A stretch of 61,002 nucleotides of DNA, the filler included, from Sluysia triapertura (taxonomy: Eukaryota), in the NCBI GenBank assembly GCA_046118255.1. It is 4 parts of 4 records of this genome, joined end to end, with 100 filler letters (N's around TTAATTAATTAA, not from the genome) between each part and the next. Parts side by side here need not be neighbours in the genome. Positions count along the whole stretch, not along the records: positions 1 to 12,881 come from JBJNIA010075496.1; 3 more parts are not named here. One strand, 5' to 3'. How positions within the stretch are numbered: the first letter of the stretch is position 1; each line of letters starts with the position of its first letter. Below are positions 1-12,881 of this stretch, piece by piece. The translations under genes and the position numbers were made by a program. The notes below the pieces were generated by a model. It saw only the letters and a list, made by a program, of their open reading frames with translations. It was not told where the DNA came from and did not search any database.

Positions 1-539
1 CAGGAAGGAGGAACGTTGTATCACGAGCACTAAAGCACCAAATGCGCAGGATACCTACCAACATATCACAAAAGAGTACACTAGGCGGTTTCGAGTCGTT
101 TGTCTTATATGTTGTTTCATCTACATGAGAACAAAACACGCATGTAAATTGCATTATTTGGTTACACAAATTCGTGCACAATTTTGTTACATTTTCAAAA
201 TTATGTAATAATGAATGTGTGCTTGCACATTCTGCATTGAAATAATCACATTGTACAGTGCCTGTTAGTAGAGGAATCAATTGATACTCAGCGCCCGTCT
301 GCACACCGCCTAAGCACACTGCTGCACTGATGCTGCACCGCCGCTGAGCCATCTGAGTCTCGAGAGCTCGCAACAAATCATAGTTCAATTCTCTAAGTTC
401 CTGTCAGAATGACAACACGACGGGGCACCCAAAGTTTTCAAAGTTACACAGCTGCACAAGAAGTTTTCATAGTGCACGATTCTGCCGCTAGTTGTTTGTA
501 TAACCACGCCTTCTCAGACAGTGTGTTAAGCGGCGTTTA

Positions 540-1178
540 TGCGGAAGGTTTTGTTTGGCCGGCGTATATTTTATTGCAAGAGCTGATTGGTCTCTCCGTC
601 GTTTTCCTCTTCACCTCCACCACGTCAGCGAAACGCTTCCCCTTGAGGTTTCACTTCATCGGCGGGAATAAAAATGTCCCTGAGAGTCATATCGGATGAA
701 TAGACAACTCTGAGTTCCTCAATGGTTTGTCATCGATCTTCACACACGAGCTCATTGATTTCTTTGGACACTTTCGCCCGTTCTGAAAGTTGTCGGAAGT
801 GCAGAATGCGGTCGATCATCAAATGGCATTTCATCATGTTTAACGCGGGTGAGCCGCGAGTAAGCTTGAACTTGACACCTAGAGTCTTCTTCGTAACAGG
901 TCTTCAACGTTTGAACGCTTTCCGATGATTTTTCCCCCATTAGGAAGCAAAATTTTACATCCGCGCCCAGCTCATTAGATTCTCCATGAAGAAACACGAT
1001 GTCTGGATAAAACATCCCTTGAAAGAAAATTTGCTCCTTGAAGTTAAAACCTTCCGCATCAACGCCGCTTGGCACACTGACTGAGAAGGCATGTTGAACA
1101 AATATCTAGCGGCAGAATCGGCTACTACGAAAACCGCGCCGCAGCGTTATTCTGAAAACTTTTGGGTACCACCTCATA
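540..1178 (-). mobile_element. Internally deleted mariner (Tc1/mariner) transposon remnant
   Basis: The minus ORF 752-1075 reads like a mariner N-terminal HTH (VKFCFLMGEKSSESVQTLKTCYEE...FDDRPHSALPTTFRT). Minus 600-700 gives YSSDMTLRDIF...NLKGKRFADVVEVK, matching the YSPDLAPxD/LKGKRF C-terminus. A mariner-type end TA|TGAGGTGGTACCCAAAAGTTTTCAG lies at ~1152-1178. The left boundary is approximate. Confidence 0.85.
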
Positions 1179-1247
1179 CCTTCAGCTGAAATGAGACTGA
1201 AGGTATCACAGTCGTATGAAACGTTTTTTAGGATAACTCAGGAACGG

Positions 1248-1415
1248 TCAGATTCTAGTGCTTCTCTGAAATTTCTTAGCAATTGTTTCGCATTTTCTAA
1301 AATTGGCTAAGTTGTCACTGCTTAGCTTTCTTAAAATTATGCGTGAGTAAAACTTACAACACTGGTTAAAAATATTTATTGTCAATCTGACGTTTCGGTC
1401 CAAGACTAAGACCAT
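1248..1415 (-). CDS. 55-codon ORF starting inside the hammerhead; corresponds to the PLE protein N-terminus carried in the 3' tail
   Basis: MVLVLDRNVRLTINIFNQCCKFYSRIILRKLSSDNLANFRKCETIAKKFQRSTRI*. The segment NFRKCETIAKK aligns with QFRRVGTLVKN, which directly precedes FLEFCLDNKLLPRF in the neighbouring PLE-2. Confidence 0.6.
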   Translation of the reverse strand: MVLVLDRNVRLTINIFNQCCKFYSRIILRKLSSDNLANFRKCETIAKKFQRSTRI

Positions 1416-1426
1416 TATCAAAGATT
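1384..1426 (-). ncRNA. Minimal type I hammerhead ribozyme (PLE-associated), U3-A8 core variant
   Basis: Minus strand reads AATCT-TTGATAA-T-GGTC-TTAGTCTTG-GACC-GAAACGTC-AGATT. Stem I is AATCT/AGATT, stem II is GGTC/GACC, and the palindromic ACGT replaces stem III, followed by a GUC cleavage site. It sits ~80 nt downstream of the PLE stop, where PLE pLTR hammerheads are expected. Confidence 0.88.
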
Positions 1427-1508
1427 CTGAAATTGAAATAAAATGCTTTAAAAGGATCGGTCAAACAGTTACATCTAAGATCTAATTAGCAACCTTTCTT
1501 ATAAAATG

Positions 1509-3812
1509 CTATCTATACAATTGGATAAAATTCGAACACTCGTTAAATTTAACATTGATATCTGGTTTCTGTTGCTTAATTAAGAGAGCCTCGGCAAATC
1601 GCAGTTCCTTCACACTATTACTAGAAAACAAGACAGAGAAACTTTGCTGATGGACGGAGAGTTCCGGCAAGCATCCGTGCTCCGTGAGATAATGCTTGCA
1701 AATGCTGCTTTGTTTATACCGATGCTGCTGAGATCGCCTGCGCAGAGTGCAAGTTGTGTAGCCAATATAGACGGCATGACAGCCGTCTCCGCTGCAATTG
1801 AACTTATATACAACGTTGCTTCTGTCAAGGGCATCTTTTGCAGACCGAGTTGAAAATTTGTTAGCCAACTTCAATGGTTTTAAAAACGTACATAATCTTG
1901 CAGGGCGATCTGCTGAGGTAGTTTGGACATGTTCTTTAAAAATGCGCTTTAAAATTTTGGTGTCATTTTTAAACGAGTAATTATTAAAAAGCTCTATATA
2001 AAATTCAGTAAAATTGGCGCTTGGTTTAGTCTCCTTAATAAAAGCACTATTGATTGCATTCCTTATGATGGTGTCTATTATATTTTGGGGAAAGTGGCTA
2101 TTGGCGGCTATTTGCTTGATATGTTCTATTTCGTCTTGAAATATGGTCCAGCTTGAGCAGTATTGTAAGGCCCTGTAAACTAAAGTCTTGATAATTGATT
2201 TCTTGTACTGTACTAGATTTGATGAATGGAAATTTTCTAGTACGGGTGCGTCTGTTGGTTTTCGGTATACTGTCGTCTCTACGGAATCCGGTTTAAAATT
2301 GAATAAAATGTCTAAAAAATGAAAAGTCTTCGAATTTCCTCTGTCTACAGTAAAATTCAACACAGAGGCTGACCTCAGTGCTTCCACGAAGTCGCCGATG
2401 TCGCTCTCGTCGCGAAACACCGCCAGTATGTCGTCGACATAGCGTCTGTAAAACCTCGGCGCATGGGAACTGCTTTCCAGGACTGCTCCCTCCACATGAG
2501 ACATATAAAAGTCTGCATAAGTCGGTCCCAATGGGGAGCCCATGCTAACACCCTCATGTTGTATGTATACTTTTCCATCAAACTCGAAAGGGGTTCTTGT
2601 GGTGACTATTAGTAGTAGTTCGCGGAGGGTTTCCTTATCAATGTCTGGTGGCGGCTTGCTTTGATGATTGTAGACATCATGAATAATTAGATTTGTTGTT
2701 TCTATGACTGGGACATTTGTGAATAGAGATTCGACGTCGAGTGAGACTATTGTTTCGTTGTTGGCCAACTTTAGATTATCAATTCCAGCAAGGACTTCTG
2801 TGCCTGATTTTACAATGTGGTTACAGTTCAGGTAAGGTCGTATGATTTTATTCAACAATTTTGCGACGTCATGTGAGGCAGTTCCTGTAAGGCTTATTAT
2901 TGGCCGGAGTGGAGGATTTGTGGGGCATTTATGTACTTTCGGAAGCCCGTACAGATGCCCGAGTGAATAGTCTCCTGTTCTCCTGAGGTGCCTGGCGAGA
3001 TCTGGATTGCTAGTTTTCAAACTTCTGCTAATTTTATTTATCGAATCTTTAAGCTCATTGTTCCATTTTATGTTGCATTCCTGGAATCTTGTTCTGTCGT
3101 TAACAATTTCTACAAGTTTGTTGTTGTAGTCTTCTGTGTCCATAATGACCACACCTTGCCCTTTGTCTTGTCTTTTGATAACTATTGATGACTCTTGTAG
3201 TTTTTTTATGATTTGATGTTGATGCTTTTCTCTGGCCAACAGCTTACGATCTTTCCTGCTGTGCTTTATCCCAAAACAACTAAGCTTATGCTTGAGATCG
3301 TCCTCACTTTTAATTGTCACGTGTCCCGTTATCTTCTTATCGACGATGTTTGCATACAACTTTTCTACACTTACTTTTTGATCTAGTTTCGTCCTTTTCT
3401 TAGCTATGGTATAATTTAGTCCTAAATTTAAGATGGCAGATTCTTCTACTGTTAATTCTTTTCGTGAAAGATTGTGAACCTGCTCAGTTTCAATGGGGAG
3501 AAAGAACTTGCTGCCGTACAAATTGGTTAGTTTTCTTTGGTGCTTAACATTTGCATGTGATTTGTACTGCCTTATTATTTTCCGTAACAGATGCACTGAG
3601 ACGTAAAATTTTAGCTTGCTTGCAGATTGTTTTAAAGAAATTATTGCCGCTGACAACTGGTGCTGCAAATCTCTCAGACGGTTTCCTTTTTCGGACAGCT
3701 CATAGTCCAGGAGTTGCCGACGATACTGTTCTGTTATTGTTGCTCTTACCGCATTCTGACTGTAGAGTCGCAGACTTGTAAACTTTGGTAGAAGCCGATT
3801 ATTTATGCACAA
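1509..3812 (-). CDS. Penelope-like reverse transcriptase with C-terminal GIY-YIG endonuclease (no ATG; 5'-truncated)
   Basis: 767 open codons. PLE RT motifs: LYGLPKVHK, PLRPIIS, SLDVESLFTNV, QHEGVSMGSPLGP, RRYVDDIL, FLDI, VYRKPT. Endonuclease: NVVYKFNCSGDGCHAVYIGYT...RRRSQQH...CKH...EALLIKQQKPDIN (GIY-YIG with CCHH residues). The track starts it at TTG. Confidence 0.96.
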   Translation of the reverse strand: MCINNRLLPKFTSLRLYSQNAVRATITEQYRRQLLDYELSEKGNRLRDLQHQLSAAIISLKQSASKLKFYVSVHLLRKIIRQYKSHANVKHQRKLTNLYGSKFFLPIETEQVHNLSRKELTVEESAILNLGLNYTIAKKRTKLDQKVSVEKLYANIVDKKITGHVTIKSEDDLKHKLSCFGIKHSRKDRKLLAREKHQHQIIKKLQESSIVIKRQDKGQGVVIMDTEDYNNKLVEIVNDRTRFQECNIKWNNELKDSINKISRSLKTSNPDLARHLRRTGDYSLGHLYGLPKVHKCPTNPPLRPIISLTGTASHDVAKLLNKIIRPYLNCNHIVKSGTEVLAGIDNLKLANNETIVSLDVESLFTNVPVIETTNLIIHDVYNHQSKPPPDIDKETLRELLLIVTTRTPFEFDGKVYIQHEGVSMGSPLGPTYADFYMSHVEGAVLESSSHAPRFYRRYVDDILAVFRDESDIGDFVEALRSASVLNFTVDRGNSKTFHFLDILFNFKPDSVETTVYRKPTDAPVLENFHSSNLVQYKKSIIKTLVYRALQYCSSWTIFQDEIEHIKQIAANSHFPQNIIDTIIRNAINSAFIKETKPSANFTEFYIELFNNYSFKNDTKILKRIFKEHVQTTSADRPARLCTFLKPLKLANKFSTRSAKDALDRSNVVYKFNCSGDGCHAVYIGYTTCTLRRRSQQHRYKQSSICKHYLTEHGCLPELSVHQQSFSVLFSSNSVKELRFAEALLIKQQKPDINVKFNECSNFIQLYR

Positions 3813-3828
3813 CTGTGCATAAATAATC
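3797..3828. repeat. Perfect 15-bp inverted repeat (fold-back) at the PLE-1 5' truncation point
   Basis: GATTATTTATGCACA-AC-TGTGCATAAATAATC. The left arm encodes the first residues (CINNR) of the ORF. Confidence 0.95.
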
Positions 3829-4359
3829 TAAAGCGACATTTGCGTATACATCTTACATTGTATAATTGTTTAAAAAGAATTCTGTCTGAAGAAATTAATC
3901 GCAAACTAGCAGTGGCGATATGGTTGCACATTTTACACTTATATAATGTACAATGCACATCACTGCTATTGTATATATTGTATGATTAGAAAGATGAGTG
4001 TCGCACAGCCAATAGGGAATAAATGAAACTAGAAAACTGGAACAAATATGCAGATCAGTGGACAAGATTTCACTAACATGAAAAACAATTGCACTAAAAG
4101 TTAAGCGTAATAACATGCGGCAATGCTGAAATAATTGTTTTGATAATAGGCAATAAACTCTAATACATTAAACTCTACAGATTAAGACACCGATTATAAA
4201 ACAAACTCCAATCACCAAACGTTTCAAGAAACAAGTAAAACTTTTATTGAGTTTAAGCAACACGGTCATAGCAAACCAACCACTTAAAAACCAGTGCTAA
4301 CAAATGTGCAAGCGAATTCATGCTAAGTTCTGAAGCTGCTCATGTCAGTCCATAACTCG

Positions 4360-4680
4360 CCTGGTTCAATGTATGGGCTGCCCAAGATACACAAGAATTG
4401 AACTGATCCACCATTACGACCCTTTATATCAATGGCTGGTACAGCAACGTATGGAATTACGCAGTTTGTGCATGAACTCATTAGACATGATGCAGACAGG
4501 GCTCATATAATTCCATAGGGTGAAGAATGGAACGAGAGACGAAGAACCGTCCTCCCCAGTTTTAAAGTGGTGTCACTAGGTGTTGAATCACTTTTTACTA
4601 ATATTTAAGTAGAAGCTGCGACAGATATTATACTACGACGAGCATCTCATCACCAAAATTTGCTTCCAGCAATACGTTAA
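4360..4680 (+). pseudogene. Degenerate PLE RT fragment, opposite orientation
   Basis: Plus-strand translation PGSMYGLPKIHKN*TDPPLRPFISMAGTATYGITQFVHELIR and VVSLGVESLFTNI*VEAATDII, homologous to the PLE-1 RT. Confidence 0.88.
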
Positions 4681-4734
4681 ATCCTGCAGAACTGTTACAC
4701 CTCCAAGTCTCCCGATAAACTCTTTCTTGGATGA

Positions 4735-5725
4735 CTATTTGATACCGGTCTATATATGGACAGATATGTTCGTTCACAAATTGCGCTGTTTAATGCGTTA
4801 CTGTGCCTGTCATTGATATTATTAGACGCAATTGTGGACCTATTGAGGTTTGATGTATTTTTTAGCCCATATAGTTGGCCTGGTGAGTAATTTCCTTATC
4901 TGTGCAGTTTGTGATATATTGCTTCTCAAATTGGTTTACATTCTTTAGCTATTTCAATGATTCGTAGTTCTAAGCGATTGTTTTGATTCGATTGCTTTCA
5001 TAAACTTCACAGTATCGCTAACCAGCTGCAGGAGTTTCTCGGTGTATTTTTCTTTATTTAAAATTACCACTCCTCCGGATTTAAGTGGTCGCTGAATAAT
5101 TATCTCTGAATTACTTCGGATTACTTTCAAGGCTTCTCTCTCTTTGTTTCTGTCCCAGTCACCTCATTTTTTGAACTGGTTCCTAGGTTGTTACTGCACA
5201 ATTTTCCCATTTAAATTCTATTTTCGATGTAATAATGTTTTTTCTTTATACAGAAATTTAGAATAAAGTATTAAATGTTCTACTTCCGTTTGGTCATACT
5301 TTGATAGGTATATGATTTTATTTTTCTTATCTGCCAAGCAAACGTTTCCACCATACAAGGTTCTTAATTTTCGGTTCTGTGAGTGTAGCACATCACATTC
5401 GTATTGCTTAGTTAATCTTGCAAAGAATTGAATGCAAGAGTAAAACTTCAAATTTTTTGTTATGTGCCTGAGTTCTTTTACTGCTCGAATGGAAGCTTCC
5501 TTCGTGTGGAGCATAGCCTCAACTTTTCGGTCCCTCTCTCTTTTCATGAGACGTTCCTTAATCTTTACAGTAGATTTGTCTGACGTGGCCGTTACATCGT
5601 GCAGTTTAATGTTGGTAAATCTAGGGAGAAGCTTATTGTCAAGACAAAATTCCAAGAACCTTACATCAGCTTCTATTTTTCATGCATTCTTCACTAGTGT
5701 CCCGACTCTCCTAAATTGTTAGAAA
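4735..5725 (-). pseudogene. Degenerate PLE-2, 5' half of ORF
   Basis: ORF 5218-5655 (EFCLDNKLLPRFTNIKLHD...LKFYSCIQF...RKLRTLYGG) is homologous to the PLE-1 N-terminal region. It continues with stops and frameshifts into GNYSPGQLYGL...LRLIISMTGTVTH. Confidence 0.9.
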
Positions 5726-5761
5726 CTCGCTGTAGGCAGCATAAATACAGTATATCAACAG

Positions 5762-6152
5762 TTAAACTTTAAAATATAGCATCGAAATAGTTCCCTGAAT
5801 AATCTTAGAATAGACGAAGCAATTTTGATCCTTCATGAAAACCCTATGATAAACTGCAATTACAATTAAATGATTAGGACTATAAATTTGTATAAGTAAA
5901 ATTGTAGTTGGTCAGCAAACTTTGTTGTAGAGAATTCTTGTTTTAAATTCATAGATTTATAACTATCATTATGTATATTTTCAGATATTAGCCTGATGAT
6001 GCCATTAGTTGAAGCCGTAACGTCACTTTTAGTGTGTTGACAACGATTTTCAAAGCTATCTGTAGTTTTTATTCACGGATAGACCTTAAGAAACTTAATT
6101 TAATAAAAAAGTTAAATTTAGGAGACTCGAGAAACTGTTGAAGAAAATACGG
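5762..6152 (+). mobile_element. Inverted partial pLTR upstream of PLE-2 (EN C-terminus + 3' UTR + hammerhead + ORF start)
   Basis: NFKI*HRNSSLNNLRIDEAILILHENPMINCNYN*MIRTINLYK* (stop 5897-5899) is colinear with the last 44 aa of PLE-1. It is followed by TTTTCAG, a hammerhead relic, and KFRRLEKLLKKIR at ~6114-6152. Confidence 0.85.
5988..6027 (+). ncRNA. Degenerate minimal hammerhead ribozyme (probably inactive)
   Basis: CTGATGA-T-GCC...GCC-GTAA-CGTC. The CUGAUGA core is canonical, but GAAA is mutated to GTAA and the stems are damaged. Its position relative to the stop codon matches PLE-1. Confidence 0.7.
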
Positions 6153-8119
6153 TATCATAATAATTTTCCAAATGAATTCCGGACAGTCGAATCATTTTTG
6201 TTCGTAATAGAAAACCTTCAATAAATTGTAAATACAACGAAATGTTCGATAATGTAAAATTTTATAGACAGATAAAAGGAAATGGGTGAACATGATCATG
6301 AAGAGACTTAATTATGTTACTTTTTAAAAACTACTTCTGAACATATTTCCAAACTTTAGCTTGATGAGAATTGCAGCTTTTAATACAACACCAGTGGCTT
6401 ACATACTTATTCGTAGTATTTACTCAGCTGCAGTCTTGAAGTTAGATTTTGCTGAAAAGAAATAATTTAGAAATGTTGAGAAACCATTAAAAAGTGTAAT
6501 CAAATATGAAGCTGATATAAATTGTCTTTGCTTTTATAACAGTTTCTATAAGGTATGCGTTGAGTAAACAGATAATTGCAAAATACTTTTAAATTTCACA
6601 CAAAAGATAAAAATTAGTAAGTTAGTAGCAAACAAGAAGCAAAAAGTTAGTTGTGCTACTTGTTTTGAAAGAAATACAAGTGAAAATATATTAATATGAA
6701 AATTATTCAATAAAAAAATTTTTAACTCTTACTTTCGATTTCATTAACTATGTATTGTTACAAATTGAACTTATTTTTTGCCAATAATTAAAGAGTATAA
6801 CAGAAATAACATTATATATTTATTACAGCATATTTGTGTTCCATGTATCATGAAATGCAAAAGAATTTCACAAGTCGCTAGTAATTTCCTGTACAGTGGA
6901 AAAGTTGCAATAACGCAGCCAAATGGTCGGAATTTAGCAAACAAGAGCGCCGTAATTTCATTCAGACATAAATAATTACAGTTTAATAAACATTTTTCTC
7001 TAAAAGTTCCATTTATTTCCAGGACTGGGTGAGAGAACAGTTTGCTTACAGATGTTTGGCTTGTTTTTAATACATAAGACAGTAAACCATGACACATAAA
7101 CATAAATGATGAACAAATGCACAGCTTTCAATAATCGTAATTGTAAAAAATAAATTTAACTATAACAAAATTAATTTACAAATGGTTTGTGCATTGCTAT
7201 GAAGTTGGAACCTTCATCTGCATCATTCTTTACATTGTACAACCAGGACCGAGATCACAATGCGAAACTTTTGTGGACCCAAACCTCGCCGCTAACTCTT
7301 GGGTGAAGCTGAAAATTGAGGGAGGTGTTATCTTCCTGTGTGCTATCTAACAGTACGATGAACTCAACGACAATTTTGAAGGAGTTAGAAACGTAGTTAG
7401 CGGCAGCAGAGTCTCATTCAAAGGATTACTACGGATTACATTATGCACAAGTATGAATAAAAATTTACCGATAATAAGTAGTAAAAATAGGGGGCTGCAG
7501 CTCGGTATTGTCCATGAACAAGTTGCCGCTTACGGCAGAGCGAATTTTGGCGTCAGCGCGCACTACTGCAAAGATGATCCAAAAGTAGCAAAATTAGTTT
7601 ATGGATCATACGACTCATGATAAGGGGTATTAAAATATTCCGATCTAGGCAAGTGACGCAAAGTCACGAATGGAACACAAAATGGCAGAACACATGTGAT
7701 AAAGTTATCTGTATACAATTTTTATTTGCTCATCTTACACACGGAATTCTCAAGGTTTTGAGATCTCAGCCGCCGTGCGAGGACATCACAGCTTCATTAA
7801 TATAAAGAACACTTTAACGGATGACTGTCTCTAAATAAGGGAAATTTTCAAAAATAATGTCTAACTACTGCATCGTGTAAAAATTGTGCTATTTTATTAG
7901 CTGAGAATCTTTAACAAATTGTATTGCTGCAGAATAAAGCTTATTCATGAAATACGTTTGCACGTTATGGGTTTCATAATAATAAACAATTTCATTGTTT
8001 ACATCGAGATGCATGGACTTATTCTAGCAGCAAATAAGTTACTAGCACAGGCATGGCAACTGAGCTAGTAACATCGAAAGAAAGTGTTGAGCACCCCTTC
8101 ACTAGCTGACACTATTATA

Positions 8120-8280
8120 CGCAGCATATGTCATCCGACCCTGGCAATATCAGACGCATGTACGAGGGGATCAAGCGAGCAACAGGCAGACCGGTGACGA
8201 GGCCGGCACCATTGAAGTCTAGGTCGGGCGAGCTCATTGTCGACAAGAACGAGCTGATGAGCTGTTGGATTGAACACAGG
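8120..8280 (+). pseudogene. RTE-type non-LTR retrotransposon fragment
   Basis: GNIRRMYEGIKRATGRPVTRPAPLKSRSGELIVDKNELMSCWIEH resembles the RTE EN-RT linker (GNIRGMYDGIKKA...APLKSxxGE...RWVEH). Confidence 0.75.
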
Positions 8281-8299
8281 AGGCGCTCAATTCTATTCC

Positions 8300-8437
8300 G
8301 GCACATGTATAGTAGCGGAGCATATGTATTGTACCGGAGCATATGCATAATACCAGAGCATATCTATAGAACCAGAGCACTTGAATAGTACTAGAGCGTA
8401 TGTGTGGTACCAGAGCATGTGCACAGCACTAGAGCTT
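8300..8437. repeat. Degenerate ~18-bp minisatellite
   Basis: About 7 tandem units resembling GTACCAGAGCATATGTAT. Confidence 0.8.
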
Positions 8438-8744
8438 GAAGTGATTTATTGTTACGTAATCAAACCTTCAACAAGTGCAAAGTATGCTACTTGAGCGTTT
8501 GTATTGCAAGTCTAGTTTAGAGTTAGGCGGTGCAGTACACCAACATGTAGTCATAGTGAACACCGGGCTCTTAGCAAACAATAAATGATATTAATAATGC
8601 TTACTAACAAAGACTCAATTCCTTGGCGTCCAAAACACAAGTTTGTACGTGCGTGCAGGATGAACACTGAACACGAGAGGCAGCATAACAGGCGCTCTCA
8701 CTTTGTAGTTCTTATGGACTACATGCCCACTCCAACATTTAGAT

Positions 8745-11160
8745 CAAAGGTTCTCGAACTATTTTTTCGCGTAGACCACTTCCAAAATTTTTATGGTTTC
8801 AGTGGACCCCCCCTTTATGCTACCTAGAAACTAGTAAAAAATTGTAAACATTAGATCTGACGATGTTAATTTGCGTAGCAACAGAGTTTTTGCCCTAAAG
8901 TCAGAGTGGAAAAAAATAATGCGTTTTATTTGTCAATTAAACTATATTTCCACAGAATAAAATTAAACATGAAAAATACAATATTAATAAAAATAAAATA
9001 ATCAAATAGAATCAATGAAACATTGTAATGGGAGGGATGTACATAATGTGTTGACAGCAAGTAATCGATGTTTGGTTTAAATTTCATTAGAAATACACGC
9101 AAATCTCCCCGTTCTATGATGTCCAATCTACTTCTTTTGCTATCAATAGATTTGTAACAACACTAAAACATTTTTCGATAAGGTATGACGTGGGATACAT
9201 TATCAAAAATTTACTTGCAATTTTCCACAGCTCAGAATATTTTACGGTTATTTCTGCCTGCTGCCAAAAGTATTGATACCCATTTCTAAATTTCTCTTTC
9301 AGTTGCTCGTTAGTGCTAAGCTCCAGCAGCTCGTCTTGTAATGAGACATCCGTCACTTCCATTTCCATTTCATCAAATGGATTGATGATCCATGGTGCCA
9401 TTTCCAAAGTTAAAATATCTTCAGATGTAATTTTGAAATCAAAATGCAGAACATTCAAATGTTGAACGTAGTAGTAAATATTCTCGTCAAGACATTCTAT
9501 CTGTGATACGTATGGAAACTGCGAGAAATCGCATTGACTAATATTTGGATTCATAGATTTTAATTGTTCAAGAAAAGCCGAAATTACAGACTGTTTGTAT
9601 TAAATTCAGGTTATCGCCTTGTAACTGCCTGTTAATTTCACTGAATTTACTAAACAAATCTGTCTCAATGTTTGCTTTCAATTTGATCAAGTTATTTTTT
9701 AAAATTAGATCTTTGCTCTCCAGAAACTCTAAAATTGTCTCGAAAAGTGCGTAAAATCTTGTTAAACAGTCACCATTCGACAACCAGCGTACTTCAGATT
9801 GTATCAGCAATCTTTGGAAATCTCATCATTCCCGTGACATAACCGTGCGAATAACAGTGTATTTAATGCATTGCTCTTTATTTTATTAACTTCATGAATC
9901 ACTAACTGAAGCGATTGGTACAATCTTTCACTCAAATTTTTCGCTACCAAGTGTTGTCGGCGGATTACTCAGTGGATCGCAGTAACCGTTGGCACAATTT
10001 TTTGAGATAGCTTGTAAATCCACGATATCGCCCAGTCATGGATGGGTGCTATATCTGCTGCCACCGAAATAATGTTTGTACGTGGAAGCGATTTATCCAT
10101 AAAAAATCACTCAGGACATTGAATATCGACTCGCCTTTAGTATCTGTCTTCAAATACTTTGCGAATAGCAGTTCTTCATGAATTTCTTCGTCCACAGCAA
10201 ATCGAACATATGCGACAATAGTGCTTCATTCCCAGGTCATGTTCACTCACCCAATTGAATGGAAAAATAAGTTGTTTTTAGATAAGTATCCAAGAAGCTC
10301 TCAATATTATAGCTTATGCCATCCATACATCTTTGAACTGTGTTATTACTGGAAGAGATTCTTTTGAGTACTTCAGATGAAGATTTATTTAGAACCGATC
10401 TTAATCTCTTCCGTAACTATTAAAATTAGCTGTTCTCCGATGGTTTACGGTCTTTCAGATTTCGCAATAAGCAGTGATATTGTAATATGCCTGCAAACCA
10501 TCATCGTTACTTTGAGACGCTGAAGCTAGCATATTCGACACGGTGGGCCTTCATATCGCTCTTGTTCTTTTTGATCAAGATGACACATTCCAAGACGATC
10601 TTCGAGCTTTGTTGAGTTCATGGATTCATTACTTAAAATTTTGTTGCATATAACGCACATAGGGAATAGTTTGTAAGAGGGTAATGGAAGAAAGCCAAAT
10701 TTTATATAATCAACACTGTACAGTCGACATTTCTTCTTAGATTCTGCCATGTTTGCTATCAGGTAACAAAAGAGAAAATATTATTTTAATAATGATGCAG
10801 CTGTTTTCTTATTATTAAACTGAAAAGCAATAAAACTTTAAGACACAAATAGAGATTTTAACAAGACAGCACAACTTATTCTAATATAAATGTACCTAAT
10901 AATGGGTAGCTATGTATTGTGTATGATAAGAAGGAACTCATTTTTTTATTCACGTGAGACAAGAAACGAAAGTTTATTCACAGGTTCAAAACCGGTAAAA
11001 AACATATCACATCACACGTAGTAATGAATTTCATGTTACACCAGTATTCACGTTCATTCGCGCAGTTTTGGATGAGTCTTTCTCCCATTCTCGCCATTCA
11101 AAATAAAGAGAACGATATCACTTTCGCAAGAGACCCTCGCGTACCCTCGCGTACCGTACC
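8745..11160 (-). mobile_element. Decayed hAT (Buster/Charlie; ZBED8/SCAND3-like) transposon
   Basis: Fragmented minus ORFs: MAESKKKCRLYSVDYIKFGF...PMCVICNKILSNESM (10526-10750), QSEVRWLSNGDCLTRFY (9568-9810), and WIINPF...FLIMYPTSYLIEKCFSVV (9114-9554). A terminus-like CAAAGGTTCTCGAAC lies at ~8745. The right boundary is uncertain. Confidence 0.9.
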
Positions 11161-12407
11161 CTTCACCAAACGTTCCACATCGAGACATGATGGAAGCGGG
11201 GGTTTTTTGGTCTGACCGACTCGTGTGCACAGAGGTCTGTGCGTGCTGTTACAGAGCCACAAAAAGTCGCATTTTCAGGATTCGACGGATTCATACAATG
11301 CTCCTTGGGACAGAACTCAGCAAGTGACAAATTTCCCTCACATGTGACGTTCAGCGGATGAATTGGTCACTCAGGTGTTCACGACTGCTCGTTCCCGCAT
11401 TCCTCTCCCAGCAAAATCCGTAATTTCGCAAGTACCACATTTTTAACACACATTCACGGCGTGAGCGCTGCGCCACTGATCGGCAACACCATTTCAAGGC
11501 CTCTGTTTCCTCTATTTTTCTGTTTTAGAGCTTCCTACGCTGGTGCACTTCCCGCACGACCGTGCATCGGTACCGTTGTATGAATTATGAATTAGCTCTC
11601 TTACGTCCTGTCAATATGAACATAATGCTGCTGCAATTTACATCGTGAATGACACATCAGAATTTCATCGAGTGTGAAATGCTATTACCGTTGAACATTA
11701 GAGGTTTGAACAATTTACCATAAGAAATTAAGGGCTCAGCCATTTTACGTGTTTGGTGGCATGCAACTTTCAGGAAGGTAACGCCTCACGTGCACCATGT
11801 AGCGGTGGTCCCAAATGGCAAGAGACGATACTGCTTTCGCATGAATACGTGTGGAAAGATTCTGTTACTATCCAACACGTCAGTTTTCAAAAGATACATC
11901 TGAAAAGGGATCAAGCAGCTAAGTCTGAATCGATAATATATCTCCTTGGCTGACCTGAGCCATCAGATCCAGACGAGTTACCTGAATGCGAAGTAATTCA
12001 GTGAACAGCCCGCAGAGGTGCACGTCTGAGGGAAATTATCCACTGTACATTGCCATCTTTCTTTTAATATTATACCAAATATACTATTTCTTAATAGAAA
12101 TGGAGCAATTACAGGAAAAAATCTCTTTAAATGAAAAAAGTAGCCTTCGGGCAATCGAACTCCCGCCTCCCGGGATAATACAAATGTCGTTGCTATTCAT
12201 GAAAAAATGAAGCAATTTACATTCTTTTATTAAAAGAACAATTTCGTTCAATAATCAAAAAGCTAATATTAAACAGTTATGCAATGAACGATCTTCTGAA
12301 TTGTAAAGAAATTTTGCACTTGTCGGGAATGTAACTCGGAACTTCGGCGTTACAGGAAACATCAATAAATGCACAGAAGCTAATGCTAATGCCAACAGCT
12401 CTATGCA

Positions 12408-12640
12408 GCCCACTTACATCAGTTATACAGGTGGCAAACGTCAGTCATACACCTGGCCTACATCAGTCACGCATGGTAGCATAAATCAGTCATGCAGGTA
12501 GCCTACTTCAGTCATGCAGGTAGCCTACATCAATCACGCAGCTGTTCTACATCACAGACACAGCTGGCCTACATCAGGCATAGAACAGGCCTATATCAGT
12601 CATACAGCTGGTCTGCATTAATCCTGACACATCAGTCATA
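12408..12640. repeat. ~22-bp minisatellite
   Basis: About 10 degenerate tandem units of CAGTCATGCAGGTAGCCTACAT. Confidence 0.85.
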
Positions 12641-12881
12641 AACATGGACCTCTGCCACGCGCATAAATGTCCGTAAATATTTCACGTGTCCAAAATGTTA
12701 ACTTGTTCCAGGAAACCAAGGCAGTTTCAGTAGCATTTCGTAAAGTGACAATGCATGTGATACAACTTTAATAAACTGGCGAGCAGTGACGCCATAAACC
12801 GAAACCATGGAGACCAGGGAAACCACTCGCTCACGGGCCCCACCAATCACTCGCTGCCCTCACGCACCTTCACAACTCGCT

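What the first reader, a model, noticed from the sequence alone, without database searches (positions are those of the whole stretch)
1248..1426. PLE start codon lies inside the hammerhead ribozyme core, upstream of the cleavage site
Seen: on the minus strand the ribozyme reads TTGATA-ATG-GTC-TTA-GTC-TTG-GAC-CGA-AAC-GTC^AGA. This ATG (1415) opens a 55-codon frame that runs through stem II and the GUC site into NFRKCETIAKK. That segment aligns with the true N-terminal region of PLE-2 (QFRRVGTLVKN...FLEFCLDNKLLPRF). No other ATG occurs in the frame. Established: PLE pLTRs carry minimal hammerheads thought to cleave as dimers through the palindromic stem III. Inference: self-cleavage would cut the start codon off the RT-EN ORF. 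A transcript would then be either an mRNA (uncleaved) or a retrotransposition template (cleaved), with dimer-dependent cleavage acting as an RNA-concentration switch. I cannot tell from here whether this overlap has already been described.
Basis: partly seen in the sequence, partly recalled or inferred. Interest (0 to 1): 0.82.

Follow-up and report, generated by a model that had tools for sequence, protein, structure and literature searches.

The report
Retrotransposon start codon inside its hammerhead ribozyme
The start codon of this Penelope-like retrotransposon's only gene really does lie inside its small self-cleaving hammerhead ribozyme, but this layout was already reported for a lizard element in 2024 and the proposed "mRNA or template" switch is not supported.

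Summary
On the minus strand, 1429-1384 is a minimal type I hammerhead (HHR) with no helix III. It has a U3-A8 core pair and an extra U between A9 and G10.1. A9-U-G10.1 (1415-1413) is an ATG, and the GUC cut site lies 27 nt downstream. In a natural tandem copy elsewhere in the genome, this ATG is the first in-frame ATG and reads without a stop into ...CINNRLLPKF and the RT.

In the window the frame stops after 55 codons because the insertion ends at about 1271, 145 nt into the ORF.

Stems I and II and the 3-8 pair covary across 16 natural HHRs. Five external Penelope-like element (PLE) lineages, fetched by protein similarity, start at the same A9-U-G. In three others the ATG lies 10-22 nt downstream of the cut.

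The layout is published for Anolis PAc (PMC11167929). The U3-A8 and extra-nucleotide HHR type is published too (PMC4209133).

Cleavage would remove the AUG. However, genomic copies end 118-150 nt beyond the cut site, so their templates were uncut there. No RNA data exist for this genome.

Verdict: a new member of a known kind, of moderate interest.

The parts
1271..3814 (-). One PLE insertion. It runs from +179 of the ORF (5' boundary, 3814) through the RT-EN body, stop, spacer and HHR to +145 of the 'next' ORF (3' boundary, 1271). That is one unit minus the 34-nt tail.
   Evidence: Homology to the tandem copy L031 begins at window 3814 and ends at 1271. An independent contig in run X2 carries the same 5' junction (loose end at L031 4896).
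1509..3812 (-). RT-EN open reading frame body (766 codons from Cys62 of the full protein, ..CINNRLLPKF.. to ..NFIQLYR, stop TAG 1511-1509). It lacks its own first 61 codons.
   Evidence: ORF list. Pfam RVT_1 E=4e-10. Weak GIY_YIG_2 E=0.011 in the C-terminal 133 aa. 1817 homologues, with full-length ones of 811-845 aa.
1430..1508 (-). 79-nt spacer between the ORF stop and the HHR. It contains the in-frame TAA (1451-1449) that closes the frame upstream of the ATG. It ends in a T-rich tract followed by CAG directly 5' of helix I.
   Evidence: Direct reading. The spacer is the least conserved part between subfamilies: alignments of diverged copies begin at the HHR (loose ends at L031 4710).
1384..1429 (-). 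Minimal type I hammerhead ribozyme motif. Helix I is 1426-1422 / 1388-1384. The core U3-A9 is 1421-1415 and the extra U is 1414. Helix II with its loop is 1413-1397. G12-A15.1 is 1396-1393, C15.2-G16.2 is 1392-1391, and U16.1-C17 is 1390-1389. The predicted cut is between 1389 and 1388.
   Evidence: the only such motif in the window; covariation; no variant at >=10% share in core, ATG or GAAAC-GUC in four runs. The type is described in PMC4209133.
1413..1415 (-). ATG formed by A9, the extra U and G10.1. It is the start codon of the PLE ORF when this module lies at the 5' side of a unit. The invariant A6 supplies the -3 purine.
   Evidence: It is in frame with the RT ORF in the natural tandem copy. 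Five external lineages start at the same position.
1271..1412 (-). Codons 2-48 of the ORF (VLVLDRNVRLTINIF...NFRKCETIAKK). Here they are present only as the 3'-terminal redundancy of the insertion, up to the short 3' end at +145.
   Evidence: This corresponds to the PAc region that holds the protein-binding and RT-initiation site (PMC11167929).
1248..1270 (-). Flanking, non-PLE DNA into which the frame runs by accident until TGA 1250-1248. It is not part of the element.
   Evidence: Homology to all other copies stops at 1271.

Best explanation
Shown. The region is the 3'-terminal module of a Penelope-like retrotransposon that lies on the minus strand. It has three parts: a short spacer after the RT-EN stop codon; a minimal, helix-III-less hammerhead of the known U3-A8 type with an extra U after A9; and the first 145 nt of the element's own ORF. 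The triplet A9-U-G10.1 is the first in-frame AUG of the ~827-codon RT-EN ORF. A natural tandem copy reads from it without a stop into the RT. In this window the module sits at the 3' end of the insertion, so the frame dead-ends 55 codons later in flanking DNA. The same AUG-in-ribozyme layout occurs in several other PLE lineages and is published for Anolis PAc.

Inferred. The roughly 200-nt module from the HHR to +176 has two jobs. At the 5' side of a unit it is the translation start. At the 3' side it is the site where the element's protein binds and starts reverse transcription, downstream of the cut site. The uncleaved, more-than-unit-length RNA therefore serves as both mRNA and template. 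Hammerhead cleavage is slow and needs a dimer and/or the element's protein. It would sever cap and AUG from the ORF at a 5' copy, and sever the RT-initiation site from the body at a 3' copy. So cleavage most likely inactivates or resolves multimeric RNA (possibly into circles) rather than producing the template.
For: Anatomy and frame.

Tandem units of 2561-2575 bp, about 96% of which is ORF.

The HHR is real: invariant core columns; covariation of helix II and of the 3-8 pair; covariation of helix I; no variant at >=10% share in core, ATG or GAAAC-GUC across contigs of four runs.

The same start position occurs in L045, L046, L047, L049 and L053. These loci were fetched by protein similarity, not by motif.

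Copies end in two clusters, at about +145 and about +176 from the ATG, 118-150 nt beyond the cut (loose ends and a more than tenfold depth drop after L031 4900).

Literature: PAc start codon at stem II, cut 26 bp downstream, protein-assisted HHR, HHR mutants insert normally, RT starts 111-118 nt into the ORF, tail lies between two RT start sites (PMC11167929). [quoted passage not shown]
Against: There is no RNA evidence for this genome. All eight holder runs are contigs of unknown kind, so neither the transcription start, nor use of this AUG, nor cleavage is shown.

Only one genomic locus (the C219579 tandem) shows the uninterrupted link from the ATG to the RT, and both of its units carry frameshifts further on.

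That copy also has a G-A mismatch in helix I.

Rfam models do not recognise the motif.

The ~79-nt spacer may hold a small intron acceptor (T-rich tract + CAG at helix I), so the mature 5' leader is unknown.

The dual-role and inactivation parts are extrapolated from one lizard element studied in vitro.
Confidence: 0.72

Rival explanations
1. Reader's switch. An uncleaved transcript is the mRNA and a cleaved one is the retrotransposition template. Dimer-dependent cleavage through the palindromic helix III senses RNA concentration.
For: Cleavage would remove the only usable AUG: the next Met in frame is at about residue 168 and is not conserved. The ACGU at positions 15.1-16.1 is palindromic. 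Dimeric action of such min-HHRs is published.
Against: 39 of 41 scored genomic matches run across the cut site, and copies end 118-150 nt downstream of it, so their templates were uncut there. Only one copy (L027) has a junction within 1-2 nt of the cut. PAc HHR mutants insert normally, unprocessed RNA is the main substrate, and no RNA-seq reads start or end at the cut. The two HHRs of one unit lie in cis, so no concentration dependence is needed. In three related lineages the AUG is downstream of the cut.
Confidence: 0.1
2. Neutral by-product. Any hammerhead with a U inserted between A9 and G10.1 contains AUG with A6 at -3. Because the ribozyme abuts the ORF in a very compact element, the start codon drifts in and out of it between lineages, and the overlap has no regulatory role.
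For: The extra U and the A9-U-G are present in all 11 loci compared, including those that do not use it as the start (L048, L050, L051, L052, L054). Only 8 of 71 full-length listed homologues carry the N-terminal RNV signature. Residues 2-6 are unconserved and are dictated by helix II.
Against: In the three 'downstream AUG' lineages the HHR AUG is still in the frame of the main ORF (3 of 3; chance 1/27). This hints at an ancestral start inside the HHR rather than free drift. The sample is small and the lineages are related.
Confidence: 0.3
3. Protein-triggered off-switch. The element's protein binds the RNA at about +110 to +176 and helps the adjacent hammerhead fold. The cut then removes cap and AUG, shutting off further translation of that RNA (autoregulation).
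For: The PAc HHR cleaves only when the PAc protein is added, and its binding and RT-initiation site lies in the first 172 nt of the ORF. The module from the HHR to +176 is the best conserved DNA segment of the family.
Against: This is pure inference. No such effect was reported for PAc, there are no RNA data here, and lineages with the AUG downstream of the cut would not be regulated this way.
Confidence: 0.12
4. Chance resemblance: the motif is not a ribozyme, and the ATG is just the first Met of an ORF.
For: No Rfam hit at E<=1. The core departs from CUGAUGA at two positions. MFE folding does not reproduce the hammerhead junction.
Against: The two core changes are the compensatory U3-A8 pair. 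All four Watson-Crick pairs occur at 3-8 in relatives, and helices I and II covary. This exact variant type is published for schistosome PLEs.
Confidence: 0.03

Closest known systems
PAc, the Poseidon-type PLE of Anolis carolinensis (Mob DNA 2024, PMC11167929)
   Same: [quoted passage not shown] The cut site is 26 bp (here 27 nt) downstream of the start codon, and positions 3 and 8 lie upstream of it. The units are repetitive. There are two 3' ends with a 30-40 nt tail inside the 5' part of the ORF (here +145 and +176; in PAc 111-118 nt).
   Different: The PAc core is C3-G8, whereas here it is U3-A8. The proteins are distant. PAc has biochemical data and this element has none. The paper states the overlap in one sentence and draws no functional conclusion from it.
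Minimal hammerheads of metazoan PLEs, including the U3-A8 covariant of Schistosoma mansoni Cercyon elements (Cervera & De la Pena 2014, PMC4209133)
   Same: No helix III, with palindromic 15.2-16.2. Short helix I (4-5 bp). A conserved G10.1-C11.1. An unpaired nucleotide between A9 and G10.1. A U3-A8 core. Located in the terminal repeat of a PLE.
   Different: That paper treats the motifs as features of the flanking repeats and does not relate the extra nucleotide to a start codon. Helix II here is 5 bp rather than 7-8 bp.
HDV-like ribozymes at the 5' ends of non-LTR retrotransposons (R2, RTE, L1Tc; Ruminski et al. 2011, cited in PMC13725137)
   Same: A self-cleaving ribozyme sits at the 5' boundary of a retrotransposon ORF and is linked to processing and translation initiation. 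The PLE relatives whose AUG lies 10-22 nt after the cut (L050, L051, L054) resemble this layout.
   Different: It is a different ribozyme class. There the cut lies upstream of the ribozyme and the ORF stays intact, whereas in the window's family the cut would remove the AUG.

Membership tests
Hammerhead ribozyme (type I, minimal PLE variant) | Conserved core nucleotides U4 G5 A6 N7 A9 and G12 A13 A14, plus a cleavage triplet N-U-H | tested here: met
   Direct reading. Columns T4 G5 A6 A9 and G A A A are invariant in 16 sequences. The triplet is GUC, or GUU in two relatives.
Hammerhead ribozyme (type I, minimal PLE variant) | Positions 3 and 8 form a Watson-Crick pair (C3-G8 or a covariant) | tested here: met
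   U3-A8 in the window. Across 16 sequences: UA 11, CG 3, AU 1, GC 1, none unpaired. For the own-genome copies the motif scan required a Watson-Crick 3-8 pair and minimum stems. In L049 and L050 the motif was found by eye with complementarity at 3-8 in mind. The count is therefore partly biased.
Hammerhead ribozyme (type I, minimal PLE variant) | Helices I and II flank the core and are maintained by compensatory changes | tested here: met
   Helix II is 94.9% paired, and 4 of 5 pairs show changes on both sides. The covariation score is 0.83 against 0.25 in shuffles and at most 0.14 in slid controls. Helix I has 52 of 64 cells paired against 32 +/- 4, with 0 of 5000 shuffles reaching that.
Hammerhead ribozyme (type I, minimal PLE variant) | Helix III, or a palindromic 15.1-16.1 segment able to form it in a dimer | tested here: met
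   A-C-G-U is self-complementary. Relatives have ACGU, AGCU or ACGCGU. Dimer formation itself could not be tested.
Hammerhead ribozyme (type I, minimal PLE variant) | Match to curated Rfam hammerhead covariance models | tested here: not met
   No match at E<=1 in 1-12881. This is expected for a motif that lacks helix III and has U3-A8, but it is a failed test all the same.
Hammerhead ribozyme (type I, minimal PLE variant) | Self-cleavage at the predicted site | not testable with these tools
   No RNA runs for this genome. Published relatives cleave weakly as dimers or with the element's protein.
Penelope-like element with C-terminal endonuclease (Penelope/Poseidon-like) | Single ORF with a reverse transcriptase domain and the DKG motif upstream of it | tested here: met
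   RVT_1 E=4e-10. ..IKRQDKGQGVVIMD.. is visible in the translation.
Penelope-like element with C-terminal endonuclease (Penelope/Poseidon-like) | C-terminal GIY-YIG endonuclease | tested here: inconclusive
   GIY_YIG_2 E=0.011, 16.1 bits, below the 22.4-bit cut-off. The VVYKF...YIGYT motif is visible. Some homologues carry PF01541.
Penelope-like element with C-terminal endonuclease (Penelope/Poseidon-like) | Tandem or terminal-repeat arrangement, an optional 30-40 nt tail, and an HHR in the repeat | tested here: met
   Tandem units 2561-2575 bp apart in C219579. 3' ends at about +145 and about +176. HHR in the repeat.
Start codon embedded in the PLE hammerhead (as in PAc) | The first in-frame AUG of the RT-EN ORF lies at the 5' end of helix II, upstream of the cut site, with no stop before the RT | tested here: met
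   L031:4718 onwards reads MVLVLDRNVRL...KLCINNRLLPKF...RT. The window copy shows only the first 48 codons because the insertion ends there.
Start codon embedded in the PLE hammerhead (as in PAc) | This AUG is actually used for translation | not testable with these tools
   No RNA or ribosome data. Indirect support: full-length homologues of 811-845 aa match the 827 codons counted from this AUG.

The most novel reading that the evidence does not exclude
The A9-U-G10.1 triplet made by the conserved 'extra' nucleotide of PLE hammerheads is the ancestral start codon of PLE ORFs. It is still in frame with the main ORF even in lineages where a stop now separates them. In lineages that keep it, protein-assisted cleavage works as a translational off-switch or RNA-fate decision for the element.
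Probability: 0.15. Interest if true: 0.7.

Novelty: new member of a known kind. Interest (0 to 1): 0.4.

Why it matters
PLE hammerheads are usually described as features of non-coding terminal repeats, and their role is still open. This work shows that in this family, and in at least five other lineages, the ribozyme is the first nine codons of the RT-EN gene. It also shows that the same ~200-nt module ends the insertions.

Both points tighten the constraints on any model of PLE expression and mobilisation. Cleavage and translation of the same RNA exclude each other. The RNAs that templated the observed copies were not cut at the 3' ribozyme.

The comparison also gives a testable contrast between lineages with the AUG inside the ribozyme and lineages with the AUG just after the cut. 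The core observation is not new, because PAc was published in 2024, so the gain is incremental.

Tried and rejected
- Rfam at E<=1 over the whole piece gave no hit. The curated models do not cover helix-III-less U3-A8 motifs.
- A direct-repeat search inside the window found no second copy of the module, because the window copy has no 5' repeat.
- A protein word search with the N-terminal 220 residues found nothing. The N-terminus evolves too fast, so the whole ORF was used instead.
- Sequencing runs: eight holders, all contigs of unknown kind and none recorded as RNA. Laying four of them gave conservation and copy ends but no transcript starts.
- MFE folding of the monomer, the dimer and a longer context was uninformative for a junction built on non-canonical pairs.
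- PLE-2 in the window (about 4300-5870, minus) is too decayed to align over the ribozyme.
- L036, the only other copy that crosses the tail, is riddled with stops.
- Pfam on the neighbouring ORFs gave nothing.
- The Lunse et al. paper on dimeric PLE hammerheads is not held.
- One contig (P0002) could not be fetched.
- I rejected the idea that the extra U exists only to make the start codon. It is present in all lineages examined, including those that start elsewhere.

Full report
**What is in the window.**

The minus strand carries a Penelope-like element (PLE). A 766-codon frame runs from 3812 to 1509. It begins at ..CINNRLLPKF.. and contains the DKG motif and an RT domain (Pfam RVT_1, E=4e-10). 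It ends in a GIY-YIG-like region, which gets only a weak Pfam match (E=0.011).

A 79-nt spacer follows the TAG stop. After it, the sequence reads helix I AATCT, core TTGATAA, an extra T, helix II GGTC..GACC, GAAA, C-G, T-C, and helix I AGATT (1429-1384). This is a type I hammerhead (HHR) without helix III. The segment A-C-G-U at positions 15.1 to 16.1 is self-complementary.

The core differs from CUGAUGA at positions 3 and 8, and the two changes together give a U3-A8 pair. The ATG at 1415-1413 consists of A9, the extra U and G10.1. C17 is at 1389, so the predicted cut is 27 nt after the A of the ATG.

An in-frame TAA at 1451-1449 precedes the ATG. The frame holds one Met only and stops at TGA 1250-1248.

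**Is the hammerhead real?**

Rfam finds nothing at E<=1, so I tested the structure on natural sequences. I took seven copies or subfamilies from the same genome, one further own-genome motif (L018, probably another family), and eight HHRs from seven unrelated contigs. The external contigs were fetched through protein similarity to the ORF.

- The core columns are invariant.
- The 3-8 pair is Watson-Crick in all 16 sequences, and all four pair types occur (UA 11, CG 3, AU 1, GC 1).
- Helix II is 95% paired, with double changes in four of its five pairs.
- None of 500 shuffles and none of the slid controls comes near these values.
- Helix I, parsed by register from the core, has 52 of 64 cells paired against 32 +/- 4 in shuffles.

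One caveat applies. For the own-genome copies my motif scan required 3-8 complementarity and minimum stems. In L049 and L050 I located the motif by eye with complementarity in mind. The external loci themselves were chosen by protein, and every locus that could be fetched had an HHR at the ORF boundary.

Contigs of four public runs show no variant at 10% share or more in the core, the ATG, or the GAAAC-GUC segment.

The type is published. [quoted passage not shown] Cervera & De la Pena described it for metazoan PLEs, and the U3-A8 form in schistosome Cercyon elements (PMC4209133).

**Is the ATG the start of the RT-EN ORF?**

The window copy cannot answer this, because it lacks its own 5' end. 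A natural tandem array on contig C219579 can (units 2561-2575 bp apart).

There the frame from the equivalent ATG (L031:4718) reads MVLVLDRNVRL...KCAKCQADINFIKLCINNRLLPKF and continues into the RT for 596 codons. A frameshift then breaks the frame. Counted from this ATG the ORF would be about 827 codons, which matches the 811-845 residues of full-length homologues. About 96% of the unit is ORF.

No conserved Met follows before the N-terminal domain. The next Met in the tandem copy is near residue 168 and is absent from the window copy. I built no family consensus and repaired no frame; this rests on natural copies only.

**Why the window frame stops after 55 codons.**

Genomic copies of the family end in two clusters, at about +145 and about +176 from the ATG. 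Loose ends at L031 4862 and 4892, and a more than tenfold depth drop after 4900, agree with this.

The window copy ends at the short site (1271), and the frame then runs into flanking DNA. Its 5' boundary (3814) corresponds to +179, so the copy is one unit minus the 34-nt tail. An independent contig in run X2 carries the same 5' junction.

This mirrors Anolis PAc. There, reverse transcription starts inside the first 111-118 nt of the ORF, and the 30-40 nt tail lies between two start sites (PMC11167929).

**Has the overlap been described?**

Yes, once. [quoted passage not shown] It draws no functional conclusion from this. Reviews, and a 2026 preprint, still place PLE hammerheads in non-coding terminal regions. 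My full-text searches found no paper that proposes a switch.

**How general is it?**

Of 71 listed homologues of 780 residues or more, eight begin M-x(3-6)-R-N-V. This is the signature of C-GAAAC-GU read in frame. I fetched DNA for ten external loci.

| Loci | Position of the start codon |
|---|---|
| L045, L046, L047, L049, L053 | The ORF starts at A9-U-G10.1. The cores are U3-A8, C3-G8 or G3-C8.
| L048 | The start is an ATG in loop II. |
| L052 | A9-U-G is out of frame and no in-frame ATG lies in the motif. |
| L050, L051 (a barnacle), L054 | The main ATG lies 10, 22 and 18 nt downstream of the cut. These were the loci chosen because they lack the RNV signature. |

In the last three loci A9-U-G opens a uORF of 3-11 codons. 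That uORF is in the same frame as the main ORF in all three (chance 1/27).

All 11 loci compared, counting the own-genome tandem, have the extra U. The U is therefore a property of the ribozyme family. Its use as a start codon varies by lineage.

**Mechanism.**

Shown: the ribozyme motif, the embedded first AUG, the in-frame link to the RT, and the ends of insertions downstream of the cut.

From established hammerhead chemistry it follows that a cut at a 5' copy leaves an uncapped 5'-OH RNA. That RNA lacks the only usable AUG, so the same molecule cannot be both cleaved there and translated into full-length protein.

The second half does not. 39 of 41 scored genomic matches run across the cut site, and copies end 118-150 nt beyond it. 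Their RNA templates were therefore intact at that ribozyme, or had been religated.

Only one copy (L027) has a junction within 1-2 nt of the cut. There an endonuclease-region segment is joined to AGATTGAC.

For PAc, ribozyme-dead templates insert normally, unprocessed RNA is the main substrate, cleavage needs the element's protein, and no RNA-seq reads end at the cut. Dimerisation can happen in cis between the two ribozymes of one transcript, so a concentration sensor is not required.

My preferred reading is this. The module from the HHR to +176 is a dual-purpose terminal cassette. It is the translation start at the 5' side and the protein-binding and RT-initiation site at the 3' side. Uncleaved RNA does both jobs. 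Cleavage inactivates or resolves multimers. This functional part is inference.

**What could not be tested.**

No RNA run exists for this genome in the index. Transcription start, splicing, use of the AUG and cleavage in vivo therefore all remain open.

A T-rich tract plus CAG lies directly 5' of helix I in this family, and an AG lies close to helix I in several relatives. In Drosophila virilis Penelope an intron ends at exactly this point. If the same holds here, the ribozyme and the AUG would stay in the spliced RNA, but the leader is unknown.

**Verdict.**

The element is a new member of a described kind: a PLE min-HHR of the U3-A8 type with a start codon at helix II, as in PAc. The comparative result is a modest addition: the AUG is inside the ribozyme in some lineages and just after the cut in others, and it is always in the same frame. 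The proposed mRNA-or-template switch is unsupported as stated.

Noticed in passing
window 1271 and 3814 (minus strand); L031:4862-4895: The window copy runs from +179 to +144 of the next unit. That is exactly one unit minus the 34-nt tail, with non-PLE DNA on both sides and no obvious target duplication. A contig of run X2 confirms the 5' junction. This fits a tandem or circular RNA template whose copying stops where it began. It could also be coincidence.
   Followed up: partly
L027:40-75 (G000:C176206): An endonuclease-coding segment (..HRHKQSSISEH..) is joined within 1-2 nt of the predicted cleavage site to AGATTGACAAT.... A template switch at the 5' end of a cleaved RNA would look like this. 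It is a single case, and TTGAC microhomology makes a plain deletion equally possible.
   Followed up: partly
L049:306-351 and L050:41-88: These are natural PLE hammerheads with G3-C8 (L049) and A3-U8 (L050) core pairs. With C3-G8 and U3-A8, all four Watson-Crick pairs occur at this tertiary pair. I found only U3-A8 described as natural, and C3G/G8C only as an engineered partial rescue.
   Followed up: partly
L050:55-93, L051:2450-2503, L054:259-303: In lineages whose main ATG lies 10-22 nt after the cut, the ribozyme's A9-U-G opens a 3-11 codon uORF. That uORF is in the same frame as the main ORF in 3 of 3 cases, separated from it by one or two stops.
   Followed up: partly
L031:4696-4899 in runs X1-X4: Summed contig depth over the segment from the HHR to +176 far exceeds that of the ORF beyond +180 (tenfold to several-hundred-fold by run) and is also higher than over the ORF 3' end and spacer. 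Run X1 lays 9143 contigs there. Either solo terminal modules or extreme 5' truncations abound, or non-autonomous (retrozyme-like) elements share this module. Depth from contigs is only a rough guide.
   Followed up: no
window 1427-1445 (minus strand) and the equivalent in L031, L045-L048, L051, L053: A T-rich tract followed by CAG or AG lies directly 5' of helix I in this family. In several distant relatives it lies within 1-8 nt of the core. This recalls the Drosophila virilis Penelope intron, whose 3' end maps to the 5' end of helix I. No RNA data were available to test it.
   Followed up: no
window 1415-1418 (minus strand): The invariant A6 of the hammerhead core is the -3 purine of the embedded AUG, and G10.2 gives G at +4 in this family. 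The ribozyme core thus supplies a good initiation context by itself.
   Followed up: no
It has several stops and no recognisable hammerhead upstream.
   Followed up: partly
window 463-608 and 990-1134: Inverted repeat arms of 104 nt and 42 nt (72-81% complementary) lie about 140 nt beyond the PLE 3' end. This is probably another repeat element and is unrelated to the finding.
   Followed up: no
G000:C219579:10331-10432 (-) and 10436-10569 (+): An inverted fragment of the tail region abuts a 5'-truncated direct fragment just upstream of the tandem array. This is the inverted-repeat arrangement described for PLE insertions (Craig et al. 2021).
   Followed up: no
window 9114-10750 (minus strand): Three ORFs (..EVRWLSNGDCLTRF....YPTSYLIEKCFSVV..) look, from memory, like remnants of a hAT-type transposase. 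Pfam gave no match at E<=0.1.
   Followed up: partly
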